DNA of 64,000 nucleotides from Oopsacas minuta (GCA_024704765.1 JAKMXF010000222.1:1054001-1118000); one strand, 5' to 3'; shown: positions 2,331-14,730, counted from the first letter of the stretch. Notes: a model not told the origin generated them from the letters alone. A program made the numbers and translations.

Positions 2331-5300
2331 AAACTAATTATTGCTGGTGATATGCACATATTATGTCCAGTCTTGACAGTTTTAAAACATCTTCTTTTTT
2401 AAAAATGAAGGATCCTTTTCTAAATACTCAGGATGACGAGTATCCAAATGTCGTTTAAATTGACTCGGTTTCATTTATTCTCCTGATAGCATCTCACAAC
2501 ATTAACACAATAGGGCTTTAAGATGTCTGAATATCGAACCACAGTAAACCCTTAATCATTATAGCTGTACATAGTTTTTTGCTATTTTTTGGGTTCTGTG
2601 GCCATAACTTTTGACTATACATACGTAAATCGAAGTTAGATAACGGGGTGACCATCTCCTCATTTGTATATAGGACATTTAATGATTTCAAATTTTCATT
2701 AATAGTTTACACGATGACTATAGCTATCACTATTTTACCTCATTAATTGAGACACTATTTAAGGAAATCTATGATACGAACCTATACAACACTTACTAAC
2801 AAATAGATGCCAAATTTCTATTGGGATGTTCTAGGAATACAAAATGATAATACCAACAAATTGGATACTAGATAACGCAGAAATAATTGACCAAACTGGT
2901 TCGAAATTTCATTAATTACACATTTGAAACCATTATTAGGGAAATGCTCACTAAATCGGTTTATGACCAATATCAACCACTCAATGAGATATGGTATTAG
3001 CCTCATACTATTCTTCGCTTTTGTCCTATTTATAATACGAAAGCAAAATTTAATGACATTATAGTCTCGAATTAGCACCTTTGAAATGGCATTGGCCAAC
3101 TAATGTAAACGTTAACTTGTTTTCCAAGGTCATAACCCGTAGGTAACCAGGACCTTGAAAGATATTGTAAATTCAAATGAATACTAAATACAGCCTAAAT
3201 GGTGTAGGAAAGTATATATTTAATCGAATTGTGTAATTTTATAAAATTGTTCTATTTTCAGAAAGTATGAATCCTATAAATGTCATTTATGTGACCAAAT
3301 ATAGCTCCGAATTAAATAATTACTATTCAAGGATGATTACATAATATATGAGTATGTTTCTAAATATCAAGTTTGGCTTCCTAAAGTTGAATAAATCACG
3401 AAATTTTCAACCGTCGACTCCATATATTTTAATGAAAATATTTATCAAACGCAATAGGAAACATTTTTGATAGTCATAATTGCCTGAGAATAACTGCGAA
3501 TATTAGTACATAAACTAGAGCGTAACTAGCATTGAGGCAGTAACCTTTTACTTGCATCCTTAAACTAATAAAATTGTTTAGGATTTACCGCTGGCTTCCT
3601 AGATCCTCGAGACCCAGGGAAACTGTACTACCTGCTCCCCTCTCTTTGGCGGCCATGATTATATATATACGCATTGAAGTTAAGAATGATTAGAAAATAT
3701 GTTTACTCTACTTTATGCATTGATGGCATTATCTTAATATATTTGTGCGTATTCCTCGAAAATGAGGAAAGATTTCGTCCAAAATACGAACAGGATTCAG
3801 AAAGAAAGTGGATTGGGAGAGAGGTGGCCCTAAAGTTTCGCCTGGAGGAATCCTTAGACGGATAATGTTAGAAGGTCTAGTGGTTGAAATAAATCAGAAA
3901 GGATCCTTCCTATCGTAAAGATGCGGATATTAGAAATCGACATGTTGAATGAAATATGAAGATACTTCTTTCACCAGAATTGATACTATTCGACGTTGGA
4001 ATGAGCTGGCGGGAATGAGGAAAGATCCATTATTCTTCTAAGATGAGTGTTGCCAGAAGCTAGAAGAATTGCTCTAGTGTTAACCCAAAAAATAAAATCA
4101 TCTGTCCTCCAAAGGATCATATGATTACTTAAGGGTCCAGGATGTTGAATTAGATCTTCTTTTTCGACTCAGATAAAAGAGATCTTATTTATCTTTACCT
4201 TGAGTCAACGTTTCAAAGCAATCAGATTTTCCGAGGCACGTGAGTTCGCATTTTCATCTGTCCATGGTCTAGAAGGACGATCCAAATTGTCAAAATGGTT
4301 ACTTGGAATTTGGGACAGCTTTGTACTGGCGCCAGTCTTGGACTGTAGCCTCACAATATGAAGAGATATCAATGTCTTCTTAACGGTAATATTCAGCCTA
4401 CTCAAAAGATTATTAAGCACGCAATTGTATAGATTGCTATGGTAATTTATATTTAAGAATACACATCTATCTTTACAAATAATTTCCAAATCGAAACAGA
4501 ATGTTCCTATTTTTTGGCTACTTAACGAGTTTGAAAGAATTCTGTAAAGAGTGAATTATACATTAACGAGGCAATTTTCATTAAAAATATCAAAATATGT
4601 TTGATAATGTTTGCAAGTTGTAGAGTAATAGTTGCAAAGATGGATTGAACAGGTTTCTGATTTGATCATTGATTTCAACAATTTTTAGTTTTTGTAAAAT
4701 TGACTCAAAAACATGTAGTATATGCCAAATTTCCCATACCCTAGTAGTACATTTCGATACGATATCTGCAAATAAGTTTTGAAGTCGTGAATGATAATGC
4801 CCATATATGGTAGTGGACATTATCAGGATAGTGTCATATTCGCTGAGGAAGATTTATAAAATTTATTATCATACTTCATGTTTCCTGAACGATTTGACCG
4901 TACATTAATGATTGTCAAGTTATTCACGATTATCAGTAAAAATGTGGCATACTTAGCTGGGACTGTTACTCTGCAACGTGCAAAACATTATAAAAGAAAA
5001 CTTTGATATTTTTGTACGAAAACAGCCGTATATCCATTAAGGATACGTATTATCAGCAATCATAAATGTATTAATAGACTCTTTGAAGAATTGTATATCA
5101 ATAAATAGTTAATTAACCGAATACTGCCCAGGAAATCTGATTTTGGTCAGAAAGGTGCTAGAATCTTGATTTGGATGTGGGAATTGGTTAAAACTAAGTT
5201 GAAAATATAGTTCCTTTCAATTATGAACGTAACAACTGTGAGGTTAGCAGGATATTCGACCAGAGTATGTTCAATCACTAATTTGTCCTACTTATATTCA

Positions 5301-5474
5301 TCATAATTACCCGAAATTCATATCATTCGGTAGAGGAGTGTTGGACGTTAGTTATATATGTTTCTATAAGTTCTTTTAATTTACCTATCATTTTGTCATG
5401 ACGGGTAAGGTCGCTTCTTTATTAGAAAGGCACCCAAAAGCGATAATCCGAATTTGAAATTATTTGTCTATATC

Positions 5475-5705
5475 TGTGCACGTGGACGTTTATGTAAATT
5501 AAATGTCATCTTAAAATTCTATAAACTCGAGAAGATACAAGTATACAAAGTTGAAGTGAGAGTTATAGTGGAAGGGGTGAGTATCATTTTACAAAAGTAG
5601 GGTCAGTTCAAATTGATATTTGATATTCAAAATCAACTCAAACTGTTATATTTTGACAACAATCGATAGCTAAGACATGAACATTTTCCATAATATCAAT
5701 TTTAT
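5475..5705 (+). repeat. Left arm of long inverted repeat (pairs with 14500..14730)
   Basis: TGTGCACGTGGAC...AAATTCTATAAACTCGAGAAGATACAAGTATACAAAGTTGAAGTGAGAGTTATAGTGG...GTATCATTTTACAAAAGTAGGGTCAGTTCAAATTGATATTTGAT matches the reverse complement of 14500..14730. Confidence 0.85.
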
Positions 5706-6182
5706 CCAGAAATACTGATAATTATCACCCTCATTGACGTTCTAAAACTCTATAATTTCAAATCTTTTTGTCCATTACGAGCTATAATTTGAAACTCAAG
5801 TTATTTGTTAACAGAATCGCATAAAATTTATAGATACTTTCGTTTGTATCTATAATTCAATTCCTTAAACAATTCAGTGGGTTGCATATACTTTCTTTGA
5901 GACTTTTTTATTCAAAAAATATTTTGTTTAATTAATTTTCAATTGGCATTCTTAGTTAATTATTGTATTGTAAATTTGTAATATAACTAAGTTGAAAGAT
6001 TATAATAAATTTACGTGTAGGAAGTCAAATTATCATACTTATTATAGTCAGGGGTGTCAGGTCGGCCAAAATAGTGGCGGCGTTGCACTAACTAGTCATT
6101 TTACGTTTAACTACAAAATTATAATGAATAGAAAATGAATTTTATATCGAATAAATTACTTTATCAACAAATATGACTTGCA

Positions 6183-7515
6183 CAAAGGGATTTCAATTAG
6201 TTCGTAACCCTAGTTATTGCTATTATTGTTTAACCACAGTATTTATTATTTGCATCTAATTTATAGCTTAGATTTTAGTCTATTTAGGACACTATACTTT
6301 GTGGAGATTGATCTAATATTTTTTGAGATACACCCTTTTTGAAGTAGGTTATAGCAACCACAGAGGAATTTATGGCTTCAAAATCTAATGAATTTCTATT
6401 TGAACAAAGAGCATACATCAAAATCCGCTCATTACTCGGCGATACGCCAAGGAATATCTACCAAGATTTAGTTCTGGTATATGGTGGGGAGGCATGTTCG
6501 GAATCAACCGTTAAGAAGTGGAGTCTACGTTTTCGTGAAGATAGGGTGTCGGCTAAAGATGAGCCTCGGATAGGGCAACCTATAATTGCTACCACTGCAA
6601 ACAATATTGCTCTTGTAGCTGAAATGTGTGACTCTGATCCCCATATTACCATAGAGCGGTTAGCTATCAGCCTAACCTTGTCAGCGGGAAGTGTTGATGC
6701 AATTCTGACCAAGCATCTTAGTATGTCCAAGGTTTGCTCACGTTGGGTCCCACACTTGTTGAATCAGACTAAAAAGAAGACCCAGTGAGAATTGCAAAAT
6801 AACTGCGTGAAAAGTATGACCAGTTTGATGAGAGGCGACTATTTGAAGTATTTACCGGTGATGAGACGTGGATAAGATATTCAGAGCCAACTCGCAAAGA
6901 ACAGAACAAGGTATGGATTGTTAAAGGGAGTTCTCCCCAGCACTACCAAGACCGGATCATTGGGCCACCAAAGTAATGTACACCATATTTTTCGATGCAC
7001 ATGGTCCAGTCTGTCAAATCTGTACTCCTAAGGGGCAAACAGTTACCGGGCACTTTTATGCAACAGTTGTTCTTCCGGAAATCGAAAAACCTTATATTGA
7101 ACGTCTGCTAGCGACGGGCCTTAGAGGAATCAAAATTTTGCCTGATAATACCAGACCGCCCAAACCTAAGGAAGTCAAGGAAAAGATTGCTTCTATAGGT
7201 CTTGAGGAATTGGAACATCCACCCTATCGCCCTGACCTAGCACCGTGCCACTTTTGGCTGTTCGATGGGCTCATAAAGCACCTAGCAGGTACAGTTTTTG
7301 GAGAACGGATGTAAATTGGAAGGGCCATCCAACGGTACCTCAGAGACATACCACAATAAGAGTATAAGAAAACATTTTTCTAGTGGATAGAGCGTTTAAA
7401 GCTTGTAGATGAGCACAAGGGAGACTACTTTGTACATTTATAGTCGAATTTGAGGCTTATCTCACTTGTATAATACAAATATTCTAAGAGTTACGAATTA
7501 GCTGAATACCCTTTG
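6183..7515 (+). mobile_element. mariner element (DD34D class), transposase pseudogene 6372..7443
   Basis: Imperfect TIRs CAAAGGG..TTCA..TA.TTCGTAAC; right flank TA (left CA). Motifs EQRAYIK, WVPHLL, TGDETW, PDNTRP, YRPDLAPCHFWLF (third D replaced by H); frameshifts. Confidence 0.9.
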
Positions 7516-7699
7516 TATAATGGAGAAATTAAGAATTGATAAATTATAGAATCTATAGTTGTGTCATTCCTAATTTCTCAATTACGGAATCAATAGTTAT
7601 GTTATTTCGTAATTGAACTATCAGAGGGTCTAGACTCTAGAGTGTGAATGATATATACTGAATGTGTTTCAAATATAATTACAAACAGTCAAGTACTCT

Positions 7700-7909
7700 A
7701 TTAGGCCCAACTTGGTATCTTTCCTTAAGCTTTACCTTTTTCTTCCTTGCACCTCATGTACCGCGGAACGAGGATTTAGCTGCTTAAGACGGATAAAAAT
7801 GTATCTTCGCAGCACTATGAAGGAAGATAGATTAAATGCATGTTCTTTATGCTACATGCATACAGAAACTTCTGACCAACTTTATCTTGACACATTCACT
7901 GACGAATAA
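7700..7909 (+). pseudogene. hAT C-terminal dimerisation-domain fragment (ZMYM1/THAP12-like clade)
   Basis: LPCTSCTAERGFSCLRRIKMYLRSTMKEDRLNACSLCYMH matches the hATC consensus (ERSFS.LRRIK..LRSTM...RLN). Confidence 0.8.
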
Positions 7910-8659
7910 ATTAAAAGGATAAATCTATTTGTCAGTACTTCTAACCGATAAAAAATAAAAACTTTTTTATCAGTTAGAAGTGTTAAGTATTACAATCATG
8001 TACCGCATATTTATTTGCAATACTTTGAGTAAACTAAAATATTGAAATATAAAATTATCTTTCAAGTGAGCATAATATTTTAAAGAAACTGGGGGGGAGG
8101 CAGCCCGCCCGCCCCCTCCAGTCTTTCAACAATTCCAAAATTTAGGCAAAGATGTGTTGGGAATATATATACTTATTGAATTAATTACATTATGTATTAT
8201 AAATACAAATGTAGGTATTTAGAATTGGAATATTACCAAGAATGATATGTCGCTCAACCAGGAGAATAATATATCACTTCCTTATTAATCAATAACATAT
8301 ACAGAAAATCTCATCCTCCAATCCTGAGATCCTGTAACTAGTTCCCCTATGCCAAATTATGTTCTGTGCTTTGTATAAGATACCTTATTTATACATATAT
8401 GTAGATATTTACAGGAAACTGAACTATAAAATTATTGGATACAAATTCGCCAATGTGTGTAAATCGATAAGTTCAGCTCTCTCCATTCAATCTTGCCATA
8501 AGAAATGATGTACGTCATTTGAAAAATTACATGAACCAATATTTTCATACATCTAATATGTATTTATCATTAATGAAAACAGCCCCAGTGAGAAAATATA
8601 GTATCCATGATCCGAATATGAATACATATTGAATTAAGGCATTTTCTCACTGGGGTGTA

Positions 8660-9135
8660 ATTTTACACAAAATAGCTTTTCTACCTCTAAAATGGGTTCA
8701 TAATGAACCCATTATGATTTAAATGTATTGAGTCTTCAAGATTTGCTGGAGGCGATTCTAGAGCATCAATCACATTAACCCCTTTACCCTAAAACACCAT
8801 CCATTTGTTTCCCTTAGTTGCAGCAAAAATCCAAACATCTGTTTGAAATAACAAAACTATCGCAATTATTTCCACATCAGTTCCCCAAGTTGTGTTCTTA
8901 CGCATATTCATTTTAATAACATACTCATTAACATTTCTGTAATTACTGTAATTAATTACTGATCGTTGAAATTTGTTTTCGATAATGTATTTCAAGGTTC
9001 TTTCCACTTTCCAACAATTCTTGTCAGGAATTAGTGATCGAATTTGATGGAAATTATCGGTATTTCCTGTCATCCAAAAGCCAGTGAAGAGATAAACAAT
9101 TGCCATTTCCAGGAACATGTAACATTTTAGAAAGA
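8660..9135 (-). pseudogene. OTU-family deubiquitinase domain relic at the C-terminus of the MULE ORF
   Basis: Cys loop VPGNGNCL (9091..9116, frameshifted relative to the ORF track), FWMTGNTDNFHQIRSLI, MRKNTTWGTDVEIIAI..LFQTDVWIF, and His loop IHLNHNG-HYEPILEV (~8670..8720, after a stop and a frameshift). Confidence 0.85.
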
Positions 9136-9499
9136 TAGTATTCGCTTTAATTGGAATATAGTAGTATTTCATTCCTGGAAATAACTAGTGAATTACACAA
9201 TTTTAAGTTTAACCTTTCACAAGTTTTATAGAGCTAAATTTGGTCTTTTGCCTTTAGAACCTCTCCTCTTTGCAAACTTCCTCATTTTCAACAACATTTT
9301 TCTTATTTTTGTCTAAATAATTTTCTTGCTAATGTTGGAAAAGCAAATTTGAATGCAACAATCCTGTCATCTACATTAACATATATCGATCTAATGAAGT
9401 CTGCTGCTTTTAACCTAGTTTTGTAATATTTAATACCTTGATTTACTATTTTAAACCAATTTTCTATACCAAGCGTTACTGTCTGTTACAGTAGTGTCT

Positions 9500-11329
9500 T
9501 TTTCACCACATATTCGAAACAAATAATTCCACTCCACAATAATAGCAATGGCATGGAATAAGTTAACAAAAATTCAATTATGCTAGGGAAATAGTAATTC
9601 TTCGCATCTTTCACTTTAGAGATGTTCTCAATAGCCTTAATTTGAGATTTACACTTTGAAAACATTTGCTCTTAATGGTTACCAAAGGTTACTTTTCTTT
9701 ATATGTAAGTGCATTTTCATATACTGTTATATCATCTTCAAACTCTTCTGGGATGTCATTACCAAAAATAGATCCTCCCCTAACACACTCTTCTAAATAT
9801 ATTAATTAGTTTAATGTTTTTCCAAGTATACAATGAAAGATAATAATTCAAATAGATCATCAACTAAGTGAATATTTTTGCTCGCTAACCCATGACCAAA
9901 AACCTGAAAACATCACCTGTTTTAGTGTCTTAAGTTAAAAATTTATCTAAATTTTAACTAATCCTATGCATTACATGTGCTGAGCAAACATGCAAAATTA
10001 TGGGAACAAAATAAATCTTCACTACTTATTGCAAATTTCCAACAATTTTTGGGGTAATATAAAATCAGAAACTTATTTAATGCCAAACAAGTACAATATA
10101 TCATCGCACAACTAAGTCCATTTCAACATTTGGATTGAATCTCTTTATTTAAAGCTAAATTAACATTTAACACCATTTATTTGAAAATGTGATATTTCTG
10201 CAGTCCCGTTATCACTAAATATCATCTCTACCACAGGAACTAGACTAGTAGAATATTCTAGATGTTGCATTATCAGAGAATAATTAAATATTATACTTGC
10301 ACAGGAATATGATTACTAATCAAAGAATCTATTGCATCTAAATTTAGAATGATAAGATGATTCAGAATTAATTTCAGTAGGTAGATTTGTTTCGAAGTAT
10401 ACATATGAACTATGAAAGGATCCTGTATGAAATATCGAACATAACCTGGAATACGAGATTCCGGTAACAAATACCTAAAATATTGTTGAGTGGCTGCTAC
10501 AGTTTCCATGTAGATATTAGAAAATGTATTTTTGGATTTAATTTCTGATTTTACCTTCCTCTAAAGTCTTGAGATTTAAATAAGTTAAATTTACATATGA
10601 AAAACCTTCAACTTTGTCACAATTGTTAAATTGTTTATGAAATATTTTACACTGATTTATGGTTTAATAAACATACCATTTCACTGCGTTTACTACCATA
10701 TAAATTGTGAATAGGAGCACTTGTGTACGATATGTATGCAGGGATTATAGGCTGCCTTCTGACTAAAACTTAACTCCCAATATTTTATAAATATATTTCA
10801 TCCTCTATATAAAATAGACAAGCTATACAACTATCAAACTACACTCGACTCTAGCTCGAAGGAAAGGATAATTTACCTTACGACTATCAGTAAGTTTTAA
10901 ATGATAATAATTGAACTTTAAAACACAAATTTTGTTTATCTCATATTATTTATCAGCAAAAAGATTTGTCCAATTGGTCATTAAAGATACGATACTGTGA
11001 TAATCTGTGGTACAAATATTATCCCACTTAGCCGATAAGAGATGAAACTCTCCAGATTCGTAACTTATATTAGTTACAATAGTAACCTCAAAACCTATTT
11101 CTAACGACAGGTTGGTGATTTCCTTGGTTTTAACATTGCAAATATTTTTGCCGGTCAACAATAACAATGTCTCTTGACAGGTTTATTACAAGTATAGACC
11201 TTATAGTTAATTGTTACCCAACATGAAGTAGGTATGTTGGCGCTGAGAGATAGCTCGCGGACCAAACCATCAAAGACTGAAATGTGGAGACCACTAAGTT
11301 TACCATGATTCTGATATCCCTTGGCAATC
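9500..11329 (-). pseudogene. NOF-FB-like Mutator transposase relic
   Basis: GYVRYFIQDPFIVHMYTSKQI..LNLDA (first catalytic D at 10336..10338), YSL..VPVVEMIFSD...ISHF, PNVEMD.SCAMI (second D region ~10110), ILHVCSAHVMHRI (CxxH, 9975..9998); many stops and frameshifts. Confidence 0.75.
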
Positions 11330-11487
11330 CTAAACAAAATATATAAGTACAGTCGAAACTTATTATTTTAAACAATCTTAAATGGAAATTCATCACAAAC
11401 GCAAACAATATAGTAAGAGAACTCGGCGTTTGAACAAAGGTTTTACTATACAATAGGTGTTTTACATATCTTGGTTAAATTATTTAC

Positions 11488-11707
11488 CTTGTTCGTGGAA
11501 TGTATCTGGAATTGGATTGATAGGCCCTGGATTAATCTCGATGCCACCAATGATGAGGAGAATAAAGACAATATACAAGCAGGAATAGCAGAAACACAAT
11601 AAGGATGTAGCCGTAGAAGCGAAGAGCAAATCAGAAGAAGAACCGGACTTATATGATTTACTGAGAGAGTACAAGCCAATCCGAGCACGCAATAAATCAA
11701 TAGGAAT
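11488..11707 (-). pseudogene. Putative first exon: (M)PIDLLRARIGLY leader, hydrophobic segment and 2A/StopGo-like motif GGIEINPG|P
   Basis: ORF 11480..11749 reads IPIDLLRARIGLYS...LLCFCYSCLYIVFILLIIGGIEINPGPINP; motif at 11522..11548; possible donor CAAG|GTAAAT at 11488/11487 and acceptor TTTGTTTAG at 11330. Inferred start ATT (11707) may be a mutated ATG. Confidence 0.6.
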
Positions 11708-11850
11708 GAAGAATATGTGCAAGTAGAAATATACGTTGGATAAAAACAATAATGCCTCTTGTCAAGAAAAGCAATAAACAAAGCCAAAAACCAAATCATA
11801 AACACGAATCAGAAATGCTGAAGTATGATTCAATATGACATGAGGTAGAT

Positions 11851-12642
11851 CATAGACTAATATATAATGCAGATAGGAAAGTACCCAAACAACGAATAAA
11901 AAGAGAAGCCATTTAGATAAATCTCATAAAGGTTTCATCGACCCGTCAAAATTATTGAATTGAACTTTTTAGGGTTAGAAAATGTAAGGAACCAGTTAAG
12001 ACTACCTAAAGGTTCAAACGGCTATCCCTCATCTCGTTTAGGCGCCATTGTTGCGATGAGAGTAGGCATTTATGGAAATTGACTTTCTTCTCAAATATTT
12101 GTAAAATATGTATTACATTAAACTTTATGCTAATATTGTTTGAATTCGTATATGTACTTCAGACTCAAGTTAAATTCATATTTTAAAGATAGCTTTTAAG
12201 AAGAAAAATTTCTGAATTATACCATGGACATGAAAATAATTTATTTATCAAAAAAATAGATTTATGAATTTTCAAAAATTGATAAGAAAATATGATCCGA
12301 ATTCTATTCTAAAGAAAACGTGCTCATTATTTATACCATAAGAAAAAATAGAGGAAATTAATTAATTGGAATACAAGAATTTCAAAAAGTAAAAGATTCT
12401 ATTTTTGATGAGCAATCGTGTGAATTTTGATGTAGTGATTTGAATGCGCCTAAACGAGATGAAGAATGGCCGTTTGAACGTTTTATTTAACCTTAACTGA
12501 TTCCTTACATTATTTAACCCTGAAAAAGTTCAATTAACATTTTCGAAGGGTTGATATAACTTTTATACGATTTGTGTAAATGGCATCTCTTTTTTGTTCG
12601 TTGCTCGGCTACTTTACTATCTGTATTATATAGTAGTCTATG
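11851..12642. mobile_element. MITE with ~200-bp TIRs (CATAGAC termini) and 7-bp TSD GGTAGAT; P- or hAT-like
   Basis: 11851..~12050 is the reverse complement of ~12443..12642 (CATAGACTA.TATATAAT.CAGATAG..AAGTA...CGTTTAGGCGC); GGTAGAT at 11844..11850 and 12643..12649. Confidence 0.85.
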
Positions 12643-12652
12643 GGTAGATATA

Positions 12653-14025
12653 CAGTGCGTTCGGAAATTATTGGCAGTAAATACTATTTTCATTATCCTT
12701 TACAAATATTCTAAAAACATCTTTATTTCGACGTCTAAGTTATAGCACCAATTAATATACTCGAAATATAATGTATAGATCCACTGACATTCTAATTTTC
12801 TTCCTTATCTATCCCAAACAATCTTTGACATTAAATATGTGCTTATTATTTTTGTTCACACATTTTAGACCCATATTTTCCGACTTTCATTAACAAAATT
12901 ATTCCACAATTTTGGTATGAAGGCTCAGGAAAAGAATAGAATCAGAATAAAGGAACTCTTTGATGCTGGGATAACAAAAGCGACTGAAATATCAAGACGA
13001 CTAGCTATACCAGAGCGGACAGTATATCGTGTTTTGAAGTCTATTTCTGACAAAAAGAGCTTGACTCATAAGAAAGGAGCAGGTCGACCTAAAATATTGC
13101 ACAAGTCTGATATGAATAGGATTATGGCACTCGTTCAACACAATCCAAGGATCACTCTGAATGAATGCCGAGAAAAATTGAGTACTCCAGTTTCCAAAAG
13201 CACACTATCGGAGGAAATGAAGAGGAGAGGTTTACAATATCGGCAGGCAGTAAGAATCCCAGCCTTGTCACAACTCCATATTACTAAATGAATAGAATGA
13301 TGTAAACGAATGAGGGGTCAGAACTGGTCTAAAGTGTTCTTTACTGATGAATCCTCTATATGGATGAATTCAGGAAAGATATATGTATGGACAAAGAAAG
13401 GACAGCCCATTAATCTGCCAACTTTCAAACATCCAGCGAAGCTACATATTTGGGGTGGTATTTCGGTAATGTGCAAAACAAACCTCAAAGTTTTTACCAA
13501 AAACTTCAACCAGGAACGATACAAAACAGTTCTAAATGAGTGTCTTATACAAGAACCTAATGCTTTATACAGAAATAAATGGGCATTACAGGAAGATAAC
13601 AGTCCTATACATACAGGAAATGCAGCAAAGGCTTGGAAACAGGAATTTGTCCCACATCAGATCGACTGGCCCTCCAATAGCCCCGATCTGAACCCAATTG
13701 AAAATCTTTGGGCTGTACTAAAGAAGAGACTCCTCAAAAAGAGATTTAATAGCTCTAATGAGTTGAAAGAAGCTATTTTGGAGATATGGAACACATTTGA
13801 CCCTGAATTTTTAAAGCCATTTTGTCTATCAATGGACAAAAGAATTCGGTTATGCATCAAAGGTGGAGGTTAGAAGATAAATTATTAGCTATATGTTAAT
13901 TACTCATGTATATTCTATTTGAGAGAGTATCGAGTTGTTAGAAATCATATGATTTTGATCATTCTTAACATAGATATTGAATGGAACCAAATCAAATTCA
14001 CTGCCAATAATTTCCGAACGTACTG
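12653..14025 (+). mobile_element. Tc1 element (DD34E), transposase pseudogene 12917..13888
   Basis: 25-bp TIR CAGT(G/A)CGTTCGGAAATTATTGGCAG with TA on both sides; FTDES, QEDNSPIH, SPDLNPIENLW with 34-residue spacing; three in-frame stops and no frameshift. Confidence 0.95.
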
Positions 14026-14499
14026 TATCATTAGTTGTCATTATACATGTTTCATTGTATAGATAAGAATAGGAAATATATTTCTCAATTTCAGTATTTT
14101 TTGCTTTCATTATCGTTTGTTGTAGCAATATTAGAATTAGAACCAAGAGAAGAGATATAATACGTTGCTTTGCACGATATAGAACAGTCATGCTCTATAT
14201 TCTTATCAGATAGCCAAGTATTGTACAAGGTAATGTAAATAATTAAACTTGGCTAATGGAAATTATATTTTCACAAATAATATTTTCTAATATTCACAAT
14301 AATGGTACTGGCAACCCCTGTTTTTTTGACGGAACTTGAATGATATAATATATAGGAAGGAGCCTGTAAAGTTCCAGGCGATTCTGGGAATGAAATATTT
14401 TTGAGAGTCTAAATTGAAATTTAGGAAATACAATGAAACACGAGAATTATGCCATTTTTTAGAACCCCATTGTGGCTGTATCTTTCGTAATTTCATGAT

Positions 14500-14730
14500 T
14501 ATAGAGGTATTATGGTAAACGTCCATGTCTGAGCTATCAACTCTTATCAACATACAACAGTTAGAGTTCGATTTTGGACATCAAATATCAATTTGAACTG
14601 ACCCTACTTTGTAAAATGATACTCACCTCCCTCCACTATAACTCTCACTTCAACTTTGTATACTTGTATCTCCTCGAGTTTATAGAATTTTAGGATGACA
14701 TTTAATATACCTAAATGTCCACGTGTCACA
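14500..14730 (-). repeat. Right arm of long inverted repeat (pairs with 5475..5705)
   Basis: Contains ATCAAATATCAATTTGAACTGACCCTACTTTGTAAAATGATAC...GTCCACGTGTCACA, the reverse complement of the left arm. Confidence 0.85.

What the first reader, a model, noticed from the sequence alone, without database searches (positions are those of the whole stretch)
5475..14730. Reconstructed DNA transposon with a 2A/StopGo-like leader, NOF-type MULE transposase and OTU deubiquitinase
Seen: on the minus strand, in order, (M)PIDLLRARIGLY, a hydrophobic stretch, LLIIGGIEINPG|P (11522..11548), a plausible 158-bp GT-AG intron (11487..11330), MULE motifs (L.LDA, PV.EMI.SD, E.D, LHVCSAH), then OTU motifs (GNGNCL, WGTDVEI, HYEP). 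All lie between >=230-bp inverted repeats; removing four nested insertions leaves ~5 kb, with roughly 0.5 kb between the right arm and the leader. Established: D(V/I)ExNPG|P causes ribosomal skipping in viruses and occurs in non-LTR retrotransposons and some marine-invertebrate genes, where it can also act as a signal sequence; some MULEs carry OTU or Ulp1 proteases. Inference: a cut-and-paste element may use StopGo recoding or membrane targeting to control how much free transposase-OTU is made. I know of no description of this for Mutator elements but cannot check. Caveat: the motif has G where the canonical motif has D, so skipping may be weak or absent.
Basis: partly seen in the sequence, partly recalled or inferred. 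Interest (0 to 1): 0.82.

Follow-up and report, generated by a model that had tools for sequence, protein, structure and literature searches.

The report
2A-like leader on sponge Mutator-like transposon
This is a dead copy of a glass-sponge cut-and-paste jumping gene; in its family the transposase gene starts with a short, conserved leader ending in the virus-style ribosome-skipping motif NPG|P, a feature I found described only for retrotransposons, viruses and a few host genes.

Summary
The copy is badly decayed: at least five frameshifts, a mutated start codon, a 0.7-kb internal deletion, four nested insertions and a missing outer right end.

The leader is a real family feature. About 25 copies in this genome (Oopsacas minuta) carry it, and four subfamilies at about 70% DNA identity keep NPGP through synonymous changes only. 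It lies 1-2 kb upstream of the transposase, on the same strand, at eight or more loci.

Two relatives from other assemblies carry a canonical G-D-I-E-x-NPGP leader followed by a phase-1 GT donor. In L084 a clean 312-nt GT-AG intron joins leader and transposase in frame. Other lineages (L080, L085) lack the leader.

The transposase hits no Pfam model. Its predicted fold is closest to the IS256/Mutator-type ISCth4 transposase (Z 13.4). It makes 9-bp target duplications and has long inverted ends. A C-terminal OTU domain is Pfam-significant in relatives.

Skipping activity is untested. The window family's G in place of D argues for weak or no skipping.

The scan had already reported a 2A-like leader on a Kolobok transposon in this genome (s1-211796). 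"NOF-type" was not tested.

The parts
5232..5747 (.). Left terminal inverted repeat (the element's 3' side). The family terminus ACAACTGTGAGGTTAGCAGG starts near 5232. Positions 5475-5747 pair with 14730-14457.
   Evidence: The terminus motif is shared with the intact relatives L080 and L084.
5748..8599 (-). Decayed 3' part of the element. It holds two nested foreign pieces: a mariner-like remnant (6372-7314, + strand) and a hAT C-terminal fragment (7712-7909, + strand).
   Evidence: HTH_48 at 24.3 bits and Dimer_Tnp_hAT at 28.7 bits; homology to other copies resumes at 8600.
8600..9225 (-). Remnant of the OTU cysteine-protease domain: GNGNC at 9096-9110, WGTD at 8876-8887, HYEP at 8694-8705. 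It is frameshifted.
   Evidence: motifs. OTU at 16.2 bits, below the 23.3 cut-off. BLASTP E=1e-18 to the OTU region of P0071, which passes Pfam.
9251..11149 (-). Remnant of the transposase catalytic region: LNLDA (first D) at 10333-10347, EMIFSD at 10211-10228, LHVCSAH at 9975-9995, and the candidate catalytic E in IENWF at 9456-9464.
   Evidence: The piece 10294-10560 is 77% identical to the intact 706-aa P0053. Alignments A1 and A2.
11150..11155 (-). Junction of an internal deletion of about 0.7 kb. It removes N-terminal coding sequence that every other copy retains.
   Evidence: L057, L060, L063, L064, L065, L067 and L068 all have 660-780 extra bases here.
11155..11329 (-). Start of exon 2 (family reading L-P-R-D-I-R-I-M-V-N ... 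S-F-D-A-L-I-R-K). The window has a 1-nt deletion just after 11277.
   Evidence: The frame is continuous in L060, L064 and L068.
11330..11487 (-). Putative 158-nt GT-AG intron, phase 1.
   Evidence: The donor AAG|GTAAT is conserved in all subfamilies. The same phase occurs in L079 and L084. No RNA evidence.
11488..11710 (-). Leader exon. The family ATG corresponds to 11708-11710, which reads TTC here. A hydrophobic helix precedes GGIEINPG|P (NPGP at 11522-11533).
11850..12649 (.). Nested MITE-like insertion, with inverted arms at 11898-12010 and 12482-12594.
   Evidence: Other copies are contiguous across this point.
12650..14028 (+). Nested Tc1-like transposon, with inverted ends at 12650-12689 and 13989-14028 and ORFs at 12917-13291 and 13310-13873.
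   Evidence: HTH_Tnp_Tc3_2 at 33 bits, DDE_3 at 69.2 bits.
14029..14730 (-). Right (5'-side) subterminal and inverted-repeat region. The outermost 245 bp or so of the family terminus are missing beyond 14730.

Best explanation
Shown: the window holds a dead, truncated copy of a multi-copy DNA transposon of the glass sponge Oopsacas minuta. The family encodes a DDE transposase whose fold is closest to IS256/Mutator-type enzymes, fused to a C-terminal OTU protease. It has long inverted ends and 9-bp target duplications. Its gene begins with a separate 5' exon for a leader of about 61 residues: a short, mildly basic N-terminus, a transmembrane-like hydrophobic helix, then (G/D)(I/V)-E-x-N-P-G|P. 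A phase-1 GT donor follows. The leader is an old, selected part of this transposon clade. It is present in several subfamilies here and, in canonical form, in relatives from two other assemblies. It has been lost in some lineages.

Inferred: the leader exon is spliced in frame to the transposase. During translation the 2A-like motif makes the ribosome skip the Gly-Pro bond in a fraction of rounds. Skipping releases the leader peptide and a free, proline-initiated transposase-OTU that can reach the nucleus. Unskipped chains keep the hydrophobic leader and are diverted to membranes, as shown for sea-urchin '2A-like signal sequences'. The effect would be to limit the dose of nuclear transposase. 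The window family's G-for-D variant probably skips weakly and would send most chains to membranes.

The confidence of 0.6 is for the whole statement. By part: architecture and linkage about 0.85, in-frame splicing about 0.65, actual skipping about 0.35.
For: Linkage within the genome:
- The leader exon has 26 DNA matches and 45 protein-level matches in the genome.
- It sits at a fixed distance inside the inverted end in L057, L060, L063 and L064.
- It lies 1-2.3 kb upstream of the catalytic domain, on the same strand, at C222, C320, C155 (two loci), C307, C308, C332 and C15.

Conservation:
- Subfamilies at about 70% DNA identity (L017/18, L019/23, L021) keep GG[I/M][E/D]xNPGP, with only synonymous differences in the NPGP codons.
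- dN/dS is about 0.4 between subfamilies, against 2.8 within one.
- Individual copies carry random hits to the motif, as expected of dead copies.

Relatives in other genomes:
- L084 is young (inverted ends 96% complementary, 9-bp target duplication GCCTTTAGT).
- In L084, ATG at 4461, then LLLSGDIELNPGP, then CAG|GTGAGT, then a 312-nt intron ending TTTTAG, in frame with the transposase ORF, which is followed by a Pfam OTU domain.
- L079 has LLLLQCGDIESNPGP plus a phase-1 GT donor about 150 nt upstream of the homologous ORF.
- Both host genomes differ from this one.

Transposase identity:
- The AlphaFold model of P0064 has pLDDT 74.
- The best structural match is the ISCth4 transposase (Z 13.4, 246 residues aligned), ahead of P element (10.8) and Hermes (9.1).
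- All ten nearest named ESM-Atlas clusters carry the MULE domain.

Leader properties: Kyte-Doolittle hydropathy over 19 residues is 2.62.

Precedent: N-terminal 2A-like signal sequences give dual targeting in sea urchin (PMC4981915). Eukaryotic 2A peptides cluster near N-termini (PMC12338488).
Against: - There is no RNA or protein evidence for splicing or skipping.
- In F2A and P2A no substitution at D12 keeps activity (bioRxiv 10.64898/2026.09.24.754024). A D-to-Q variant in a sea-urchin CR1 element had very low activity (PMC3708506). The window family's conserved G may therefore be inactive, although a GxExNPGP motif is reported as active in DHAV-1 (PMC6249498 abstract).
- Without splicing, a stop codon follows the donor within 2-3 codons.
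- L080 and L085 are near-intact relatives without any NPGP.
- L083 has an intact 715-aa ORF but a scrambled leader reading NPGH and NPWT.
- In subfamilies L017/18 and L023 an in-frame stop sits at the position of the main family's exon-2 start, so the acceptor site is not uniform.
- The Pfam MULE model does not match any member.
Confidence: 0.6

Rival explanations
1. The leader is translated and joined to the transposase but no longer (or never) recodes. In the window family it would act only as an N-terminal signal-anchor or regulatory peptide, or as a relic of a once-active 2A, with G in place of D disabling skipping.
For: - D12 is intolerant to every substitution in F2A and P2A. A D-to-Q variant gives very low activity.
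- G is the conserved state in all four O. minuta subfamilies.
- The hydrophobic helix is longer and stronger (hydropathy 2.62) than in L084 (1.43).
Against: - The NPGP codons are still kept by purifying selection in the G-bearing subfamilies. That is hard to explain for a plain signal anchor.
- GxExNPGP is reported active in DHAV-1.
- Membrane anchoring of all transposase molecules would be self-defeating for the element.
Confidence: 0.25
2. The leader exon is not spliced to the transposase. It would be a separate small upstream ORF, or part of the 5' UTR or promoter module, whose translation tunes initiation at a downstream ATG such as the conserved M in I-R-I-M-V-N-L.
For: - A stop codon follows the GT within 2-3 codons in all lineages.
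- A deletion-derivative subfamily (L008-L010) removes the 2A part and leaves that M at the head of the frame.
- Leaderless relatives exist.
Against: - A 2A motif at the end of a stand-alone peptide has no downstream product to release.
- The donor consensus AAG|GTAAT or CAG|GTGAGT and phase 1 are conserved across three lineages that share under 45% protein identity.
- Exon 2 is in frame in L084 and in the family consensus.
Confidence: 0.13
3. The 2A-like piece is a captured or adjacent fragment of a non-LTR retrotransposon, or a chance motif, unrelated to the transposon's biology.
For: 2A-like leaders are known from the N-terminal region of LINE ORFs. The genome has other NPGP groups that I could not inspect.
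Against: - Position and orientation relative to the inverted end and the transposase are fixed at eight or more loci, in several subfamilies and in two other genomes.
- There are 26 motif hits against 1 control hit, most of them inside leader homologues.
- No reverse-transcriptase remnant adjoins it in the window.
Confidence: 0.02

Closest known systems
N-terminal 2A-like sequences of APE-type non-LTR retrotransposons (Odon et al. 2013, PMC3708506) and of trypanosome L1Tc/Ingi
   Same: A short N-terminal leader ending in D(V/I)ExNPG|P at the head of a mobile element's main ORF. Variants with substitutions at key residues are common.
   Different: Here the carrier is a class II cut-and-paste element. 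The leader is a separate exon followed by a phase-1 intron, and it contains a transmembrane-like helix.
Sea-urchin NLR '2A-like signal sequences' (Roulston et al. 2016, PMC4981915)
   Same: An N-terminal hydrophobic peptide that ends in a 2A motif, proposed to split the product between cytosol and secretory pathway.
   Different: Those are host immune-type genes with demonstrated activity. Here it is a transposase, with no assay, and with G for D in the window's family.
Mutator/MULE transposons with C-terminal cysteine proteases (OTU in Medicago MULEs, Babu et al. 2006, PMC1702500; Ulp1 in many MULEs, PMC2836005)
   Same: Long inverted ends, 9-bp target duplication, and a DDE transposase with an all-alpha insertion fused to an OTU-type protease.
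   Different: No match to Pfam PF10551 or to local MULE proteins by BLAST or hhalign. Only 37-45 relatives turned up in about 2-6 billion proteins, nearly all from sponge-like assemblies. No recognised WRKY/FLYWCH or SWIM domain.
Foldback/NOF and Phantom-type elements
   Same: The relatives L080 and L084 have inverted ends built of about 183-185-bp tandem subrepeats.
   Different: The window's own family has no tandem subrepeats. Homology to the NOF protein could not be tested.
Earlier scan finding s1-211796: 2A-like leader on a Kolobok transposase in the same genome
   Same: A hydrophobic leader of about 57-61 residues ending in NPG|P at the head of a DNA transposase in O. minuta.
   Different: A different transposase superfamily. 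In that finding the leader is reported in one frame with the enzyme, whereas here an intron intervenes. Whether the two leaders are homologous was not testable.

Membership tests
Mutator/MULE (IS256-like) DNA transposons | Match to the Pfam MULE transposase domain PF10551 | tested here: not met
   There was no hit for window pieces, better copies or intact relatives, even at E<=1. None of the family's genomic copies appears among 148 PF10551 hits. Precomputed Pfam is '-' for 44 of 45 relatives; the other shows OTU only.
Mutator/MULE (IS256-like) DNA transposons | RNase H-like DDE core with an insertion domain, structurally closest to IS256/Mutator-type enzymes | tested here: met
   The AlphaFold model of P0064 has pLDDT 74. 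VIA-align gives ISCth4 Z 13.4/13.2/11.6, P element 10.8 and Hermes 9.1. Foldseek alone ranks Hermes first (E 4.7e-4, against 3.4e-3 for ISCth4). ESM-Atlas features: 10 of 10 nearest clusters carry MULE, at 0.90-0.92. That ISCth4 belongs to IS256 rests on my own knowledge.
Mutator/MULE (IS256-like) DNA transposons | Target-site duplication of about 9 bp (8-11) | tested here: met
   L084 has GCCTTTAGT on both sides. The L035/L036 pair is compatible with 8-10 bp. No duplication was found for L080. The window copy is untestable because its right end is missing.
Mutator/MULE (IS256-like) DNA transposons | Long terminal inverted repeats | tested here: met
   The ends are about 0.7-0.95 kb in L057, L058, L080 and L084. 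In the window 276 bp still pair.
Mutator/MULE (IS256-like) DNA transposons | N-terminal WRKY-GCM1/FLYWCH-type zinc-finger DNA-binding domain | tested here: inconclusive
   No Pfam FAR1, FLYWCH or DBD_Tnp_Mut hit on the N-terminal pieces. A C/H-rich segment before the catalytic core was seen by eye only.
Foldback/NOF-type elements | Inverted ends built of tandem subrepeats; homology to the NOF protein | tested here: inconclusive
   Subrepeats of 183 bp (three copies) occur in L080 and similar ones in L084. None occur in the window's family. No NOF sequence was available for comparison.
2A/StopGo recoding peptides | C-terminal N-P-G|P with a proline codon following | tested here: met
   Present in the window at 11522-11533. 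It is the consensus state of four subfamilies and is present in L079 and L084.
2A/StopGo recoding peptides | Full octapeptide D(V/I)ExNPGP | tested here: not met
   The window family has G at the D position (GGIEINPGP; GGMDINPGP in L019). The relatives L079 (GDIESNPGP) and L084 (GDIELNPGP) do meet it.
2A/StopGo recoding peptides | Leu-rich or hydrophobic tract immediately upstream | tested here: met
   The tracts are ...SILLIIGG in the window family and ...TQLLLSG in L084.
2A/StopGo recoding peptides | Demonstrated skipping of the Gly-Pro bond | not testable with these tools
   This needs a translation reporter assay.
OTU cysteine proteases | Pfam PF02338 above the cut-off, with Cys and His motifs | tested here: met
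   The window piece scores 16.2 bits, below the 23.3 cut-off. It aligns at E=1e-18 to the OTU region of P0071. Relatives pass the cut-off: L080 at 32.2 bits and P0071 at 30.0 bits. The Cys motif GNGNC and the His motif HYEP are present in the window.

The most novel reading that the evidence does not exclude
StopGo leaders are an old, exchangeable 5' module of sponge DNA transposons. They occur here in a divergent Mutator-like clade and, per the scan, in Kolobok. The module would gate how much transposase escapes membrane capture to reach the nucleus. If so, this is the first use of translational recoding plus dual targeting as a self-limiting device in class II elements. The transposase clade itself, which Pfam does not recognise, would be a new Mutator-related lineage.
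Probability: 0.3. Interest if true: 0.8.

Novelty: new variant of a known kind. Interest (0 to 1): 0.62.

Why it matters
2A/StopGo peptides are known from RNA viruses, from non-LTR retrotransposons and from a few invertebrate host genes. Recent large surveys list only LINE ORF1p/ORF2p among transposable-element carriers and do not mention transposases.

A conserved 2A-like leader on cut-and-paste transposases extends recoding to class II elements. It also points to a simple way for a transposon to set the dose or location of its own enzyme. And it supplies natural paired D and G variants (L084/L079 against the O. minuta family) for testing what the first motif residue does.

The work also uncovers a transposase-OTU clade that Pfam's models miss. 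Automated annotation would not label members of this clade as transposases.

Tried and rejected
- BLAST (tblastn) of ten Pfam-confirmed MULE proteins of this genome against the element gave nothing significant.
- hhalign of the family profile against two local MULEs gave probability below 1%.
- A profile search of PDB sequences gave 0 hits.
- The first AlphaFold run, with a 14-row alignment, gave pLDDT 40 and was unusable.
- The 'atlas' fold library was not available.
The intact or leader-linked loci C61, C301, C308, C332 and C346 could therefore only be placed by coordinates, not read.
- An alternative acceptor at 11277 (a 211-nt intron) is in frame only because of the window's private 1-nt deletion.
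- The 2A-less copies L008-L010 first looked like a spliced, processed variant. Their boundaries are not GT-AG and sit at a short direct repeat, so they are an ordinary deletion-derivative subfamily.
- Elements with extra outer termini (CTGTTGCGTGAG...) gave no consistent target duplication.
- L086 and L087 were uninformative about the leader.
- No complex prediction was run, because no binding claim is made.
- The joined (spliced) leader-transposase protein was not sent to any search. Exons were searched separately by reference.
- Inside scripts only, a consensus of the 270-nt leader exon of this sponge DNA transposon was computed, and two same-frame pieces of L079 were joined with X at the stop for the tree.

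Full report
**Observation**

- The leader ORF ends in L-L-I-I-G-G-I-E-I-N-P-G-P, with NPGP at 11522-11533.
- A GT at 11487 and an AG at 11330 bound a 158-nt interval.
- The transposase-like motifs are LNLDA (10333-10347), EMIFSD (10211-10228) and LHVCSAH (9975-9995).
- The OTU-like motifs are GNGNC (9096-9110), WGTD (8876-8887) and HYEP (8694-8705).

The motifs lie in three different frames, so this copy is dead. The inverted repeat is real: 5475-5747 pairs with 14730-14457 (276 nt, 85%).

Comparison with other copies changes the boundaries.
- The family's ends run about 245 bp further out. The left terminus is near 5232.
- The right arm lacks this outer part.
- Window 11850-14028 is two nested insertions, a MITE-like element and a Tc1-like element.
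- A mariner remnant and a hAT fragment lie in 6372-7909.
- About 0.7 kb of coding sequence is deleted near 11150.

**Host**

The genome has 61.5 Mb in 365 contigs. Related proteins are named 'hypothetical protein LOD99_... [Oopsacas minuta]'. Earlier scan notes call it a glass sponge.

**Is the leader part of the element?**

- The leader exon has 26 DNA matches in the genome at 70-88% identity and 45 matches at protein level.
- In L057, L060, L063 and L064 it lies at the same distance inside the inverted end as in the window, once the nested insertions are removed.
- An alignment of 22 copies gives a family consensus. It has an ATG (mutated to TTC in the window), a leader of about 61 residues, then NPG|P, 11 more codons, and a conserved AAG|GTAAT donor in phase 1.
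The window has a private 1-nt deletion there.
- Single copies carry random damage to the motif (IDQGP, NPGS, NPWP, NPGA, NPGH, HPAP). The consensus of each of four subfamilies, which are only about 70% identical in DNA, is GG[I/M][E/D]xNPGP, with synonymous differences only in the NPGP codons.
- Over about 35 codons, dN/dS between the main subfamily and L018, L019, L023 or L021 is 0.38-0.42 (pS 0.43-0.51). The comparison with L017 gives 1.06. Two copies of one subfamily give 2.8, as expected of neutral decay. The sample is small.
- A genome-wide scan for [V/I/M]-E-x-N-P-G-P codons gives 26 hits against 1 for the reversed control. Most hits fall inside leader homologues.

**Linkage to the transposase**

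Protein pieces of the window's catalytic region find 89 and 59 places in the genome. Leader or NPGP hits lie 1-2.3 kb upstream on the same strand at these sites:
- C222, C320, C155 (two loci) and C307;
- C308:317981 and C332:1254638, which belong to very divergent lineages reading VEVNPGP;
- C15, in a rearranged form.

A Pfam-significant OTU domain lies about 1.6-1.8 kb downstream of the catalytic hits at ten or more loci. Several more distant, open-frame copies (C61 at 843 aa, C301, C346, C327) have no leader hit nearby, but I could not read them.

**Relatives elsewhere**

A full HMMER scan of 1.84 billion representative proteins with the 89-aa piece gave only 37 hits, mostly fragments. A profile search of 5.8 billion proteins gave 45 hits. 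Their contigs were decisive.

L084 (ENA ERZ20067936) is a young element of about 5.5 kb.
- Its inverted ends are 96% complementary and built of subrepeats, and it has a clean 9-bp target duplication, GCCTTTAGT.
- It carries ATG at 4461, then ...LLLSGDIELNPGP, then CAG|GTGAGT in phase 1.
- A 312-nt intron ending TTTTAG follows, and exon 2 is in frame with the transposase ORFs. A Pfam OTU domain comes after them.

L079 (ENA ERZ25072730) has LLLLQCGDIESNPGP plus a phase-1 GT donor about 150 nt upstream of the homologous ORF.

L083 is a near-intact copy of the window's own family, 77% identical in the catalytic piece, with a scrambled leader.

L080 and L085 are near-intact but have no NPGP.

The flanks of L080 and L084 share only short repeats with this genome, so they come from different, probably related, species. 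The terminal motif ACGA(C/G)TGTGAAGTT is shared by the window's family, L080 and L084. The inverted arms therefore belong to this transposase clade.

In a maximum-likelihood tree the leader-bearing lineages form two well-supported groups: L084 with L079, and the window's family. The leaderless L080 type is sister to the group that contains the window's family (support 91/98). Together with the shared L-F-S-T-x-L-L segment and the shared intron phase, this favours an ancestral leader with later losses. Two gains, or exchange of the module between elements, are not excluded.

**What the transposase is**

No Pfam model matches any member. Local MULE proteins show no similarity by tblastn or hhalign. 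Three independent lines still point to the Mutator/IS256 group.
- All ten nearest named ESM-Atlas clusters carry the MULE domain, at 0.90-0.92. This is a lead only.
- An AlphaFold model of P0064 (pLDDT 74) is closest by VIA-align to the ISCth4 transposase (Z 13.4, 246 aligned residues). P element follows at 10.8 and Hermes at 9.1. Foldseek alone put Hermes slightly first. That ISCth4 is an IS256-family enzyme, and that IS256 is the bacterial kin of Mutator, rests on my own knowledge.
- The target duplication is 9 bp and the inverted ends are long.

I therefore call it a divergent Mutator-like clade, not a demonstrated member of Pfam's MULE family. 'NOF-type' was not tested. Tandem subrepeats in the ends occur in L080 and L084 but not in the window's family.

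The OTU assignment is sound. Relatives pass Pfam (32.2 and 30.0 bits), and the window's remnant aligns to them at E=1e-18.

**Mechanism**

Shown: the architecture described above.

Inferred: the splicing, and a StopGo event at G|P that would release a leader peptide of about 61 residues and a proline-initiated transposase-OTU.

The leader's hydrophobic helix scores 2.62 on the Kyte-Doolittle scale over 19 residues (1.43 in L084). It resembles the N-terminal '2A-like signal sequences' of sea-urchin NLR genes. In those, skipped products stay cytosolic and unskipped products enter the secretory pathway (PMC4981915). Eukaryotic 2A peptides in general sit near N-termini (PMC12338488). For a transposase, this arrangement would cap the nuclear dose.

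Several points count against activity in the window's family.
- D12 tolerated no substitution in deep mutational scans of F2A and P2A, and D12A abolishes activity.
- A D-to-Q variant in a CR1 element was nearly inactive.
- On the other side, a GxExNPGP motif is reported active in duck hepatitis A virus (PMC6249498 abstract).
- The NPGP codons remain under selection in the G-bearing subfamilies.

**Novelty**

The library searches turned up 2A-like peptides in viruses, non-LTR retrotransposons and host genes. None of the papers opened mentions a DNA transposase. OTU or Ulp1 fusions to MULE, Ginger and Helitron proteins are known. The scan itself had already reported a 2A-like leader on a Kolobok transposase in this genome (s1-211796). 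I did not re-test that report.

The present case adds four things:
- a second superfamily carrying such a leader;
- an exon-intron architecture conserved across genomes;
- natural D and G variants of the motif;
- evidence of losses of the leader.

The spliced protein was never joined for a search. Exons were searched separately by reference. Nothing in the window looked human.

Noticed in passing
L059 (G000:C359:53400-58500), ORFs at 1750-2586 and 2418-3923: An element with the same subterminal repeats, but with extra outer termini, carries a different cargo. The cargo is a 502-aa ORF with a weak Pfam RAG1 match (E=1.2e-4) that ends in a CCHC-like motif.
   Followed up: partly
L028/29, L032/33, L039-L043, L046/47; L058 (G000:C55:310800-315800): This is a second element type. 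Its ends add 34-90 bp (CTGTTGCGTGAGATTTTAACTCAT...) outside the ACGACTGTGAAG terminus of the window's family. One copy (L058) carries a bona fide Pfam MULE transposase (34.4 bits) in place of the 2A-leader gene. No target duplication was found. The right flank of L084, in another genome, begins with the same CTGTTGCGTG.
   Followed up: partly
G000, many contigs: Many Pfam MULE hits come as inverted pairs about 1.5 kb apart, for example C301:38843(+)/40362(-) and C308:48496(+)/49985(-). They look like elements whose long inverted ends include the transposase domain.
   Followed up: no
P0093 (UniRef A0A1B0AE44, Glossina pallidipes) and P0094: These are the only non-sponge-like relatives of this transposase (E about 1e-12). 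They keep the LDATGS and E-G-W-F-H motifs but seem to lack the second-aspartate segment. They may be domesticated or degenerate copies in a tsetse fly.
   Followed up: no
L008, L009, L010 (also in L060, L055, L057): A transposed deletion-derivative subfamily has lost the 3' part of the leader exon (including NPGP), the intron and the first codons of exon 2.
   Followed up: yes
L083 (ENA ERZ25072730 contig, 9060-9790): This near-intact copy of the window's family has a 715-aa open frame. Its leader region is partly duplicated and its motifs read NPGH and NPWT.
   Followed up: partly
window 12650-14028: A nested Tc1-like element with 40-nt inverted ends and two open ORFs (124 and 187 aa; DDE_3 at 69 bits). 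It looks younger than its host element.
   Followed up: partly
L081, L082 (ENA ERZ26869290 contigs): These contigs consist of several direct and inverted copies of the same transposase fragments, and may be assembly collapses of a repeat. L081 also holds a FLYWCH+MULE gene next to an OTU-bearing copy.
   Followed up: no
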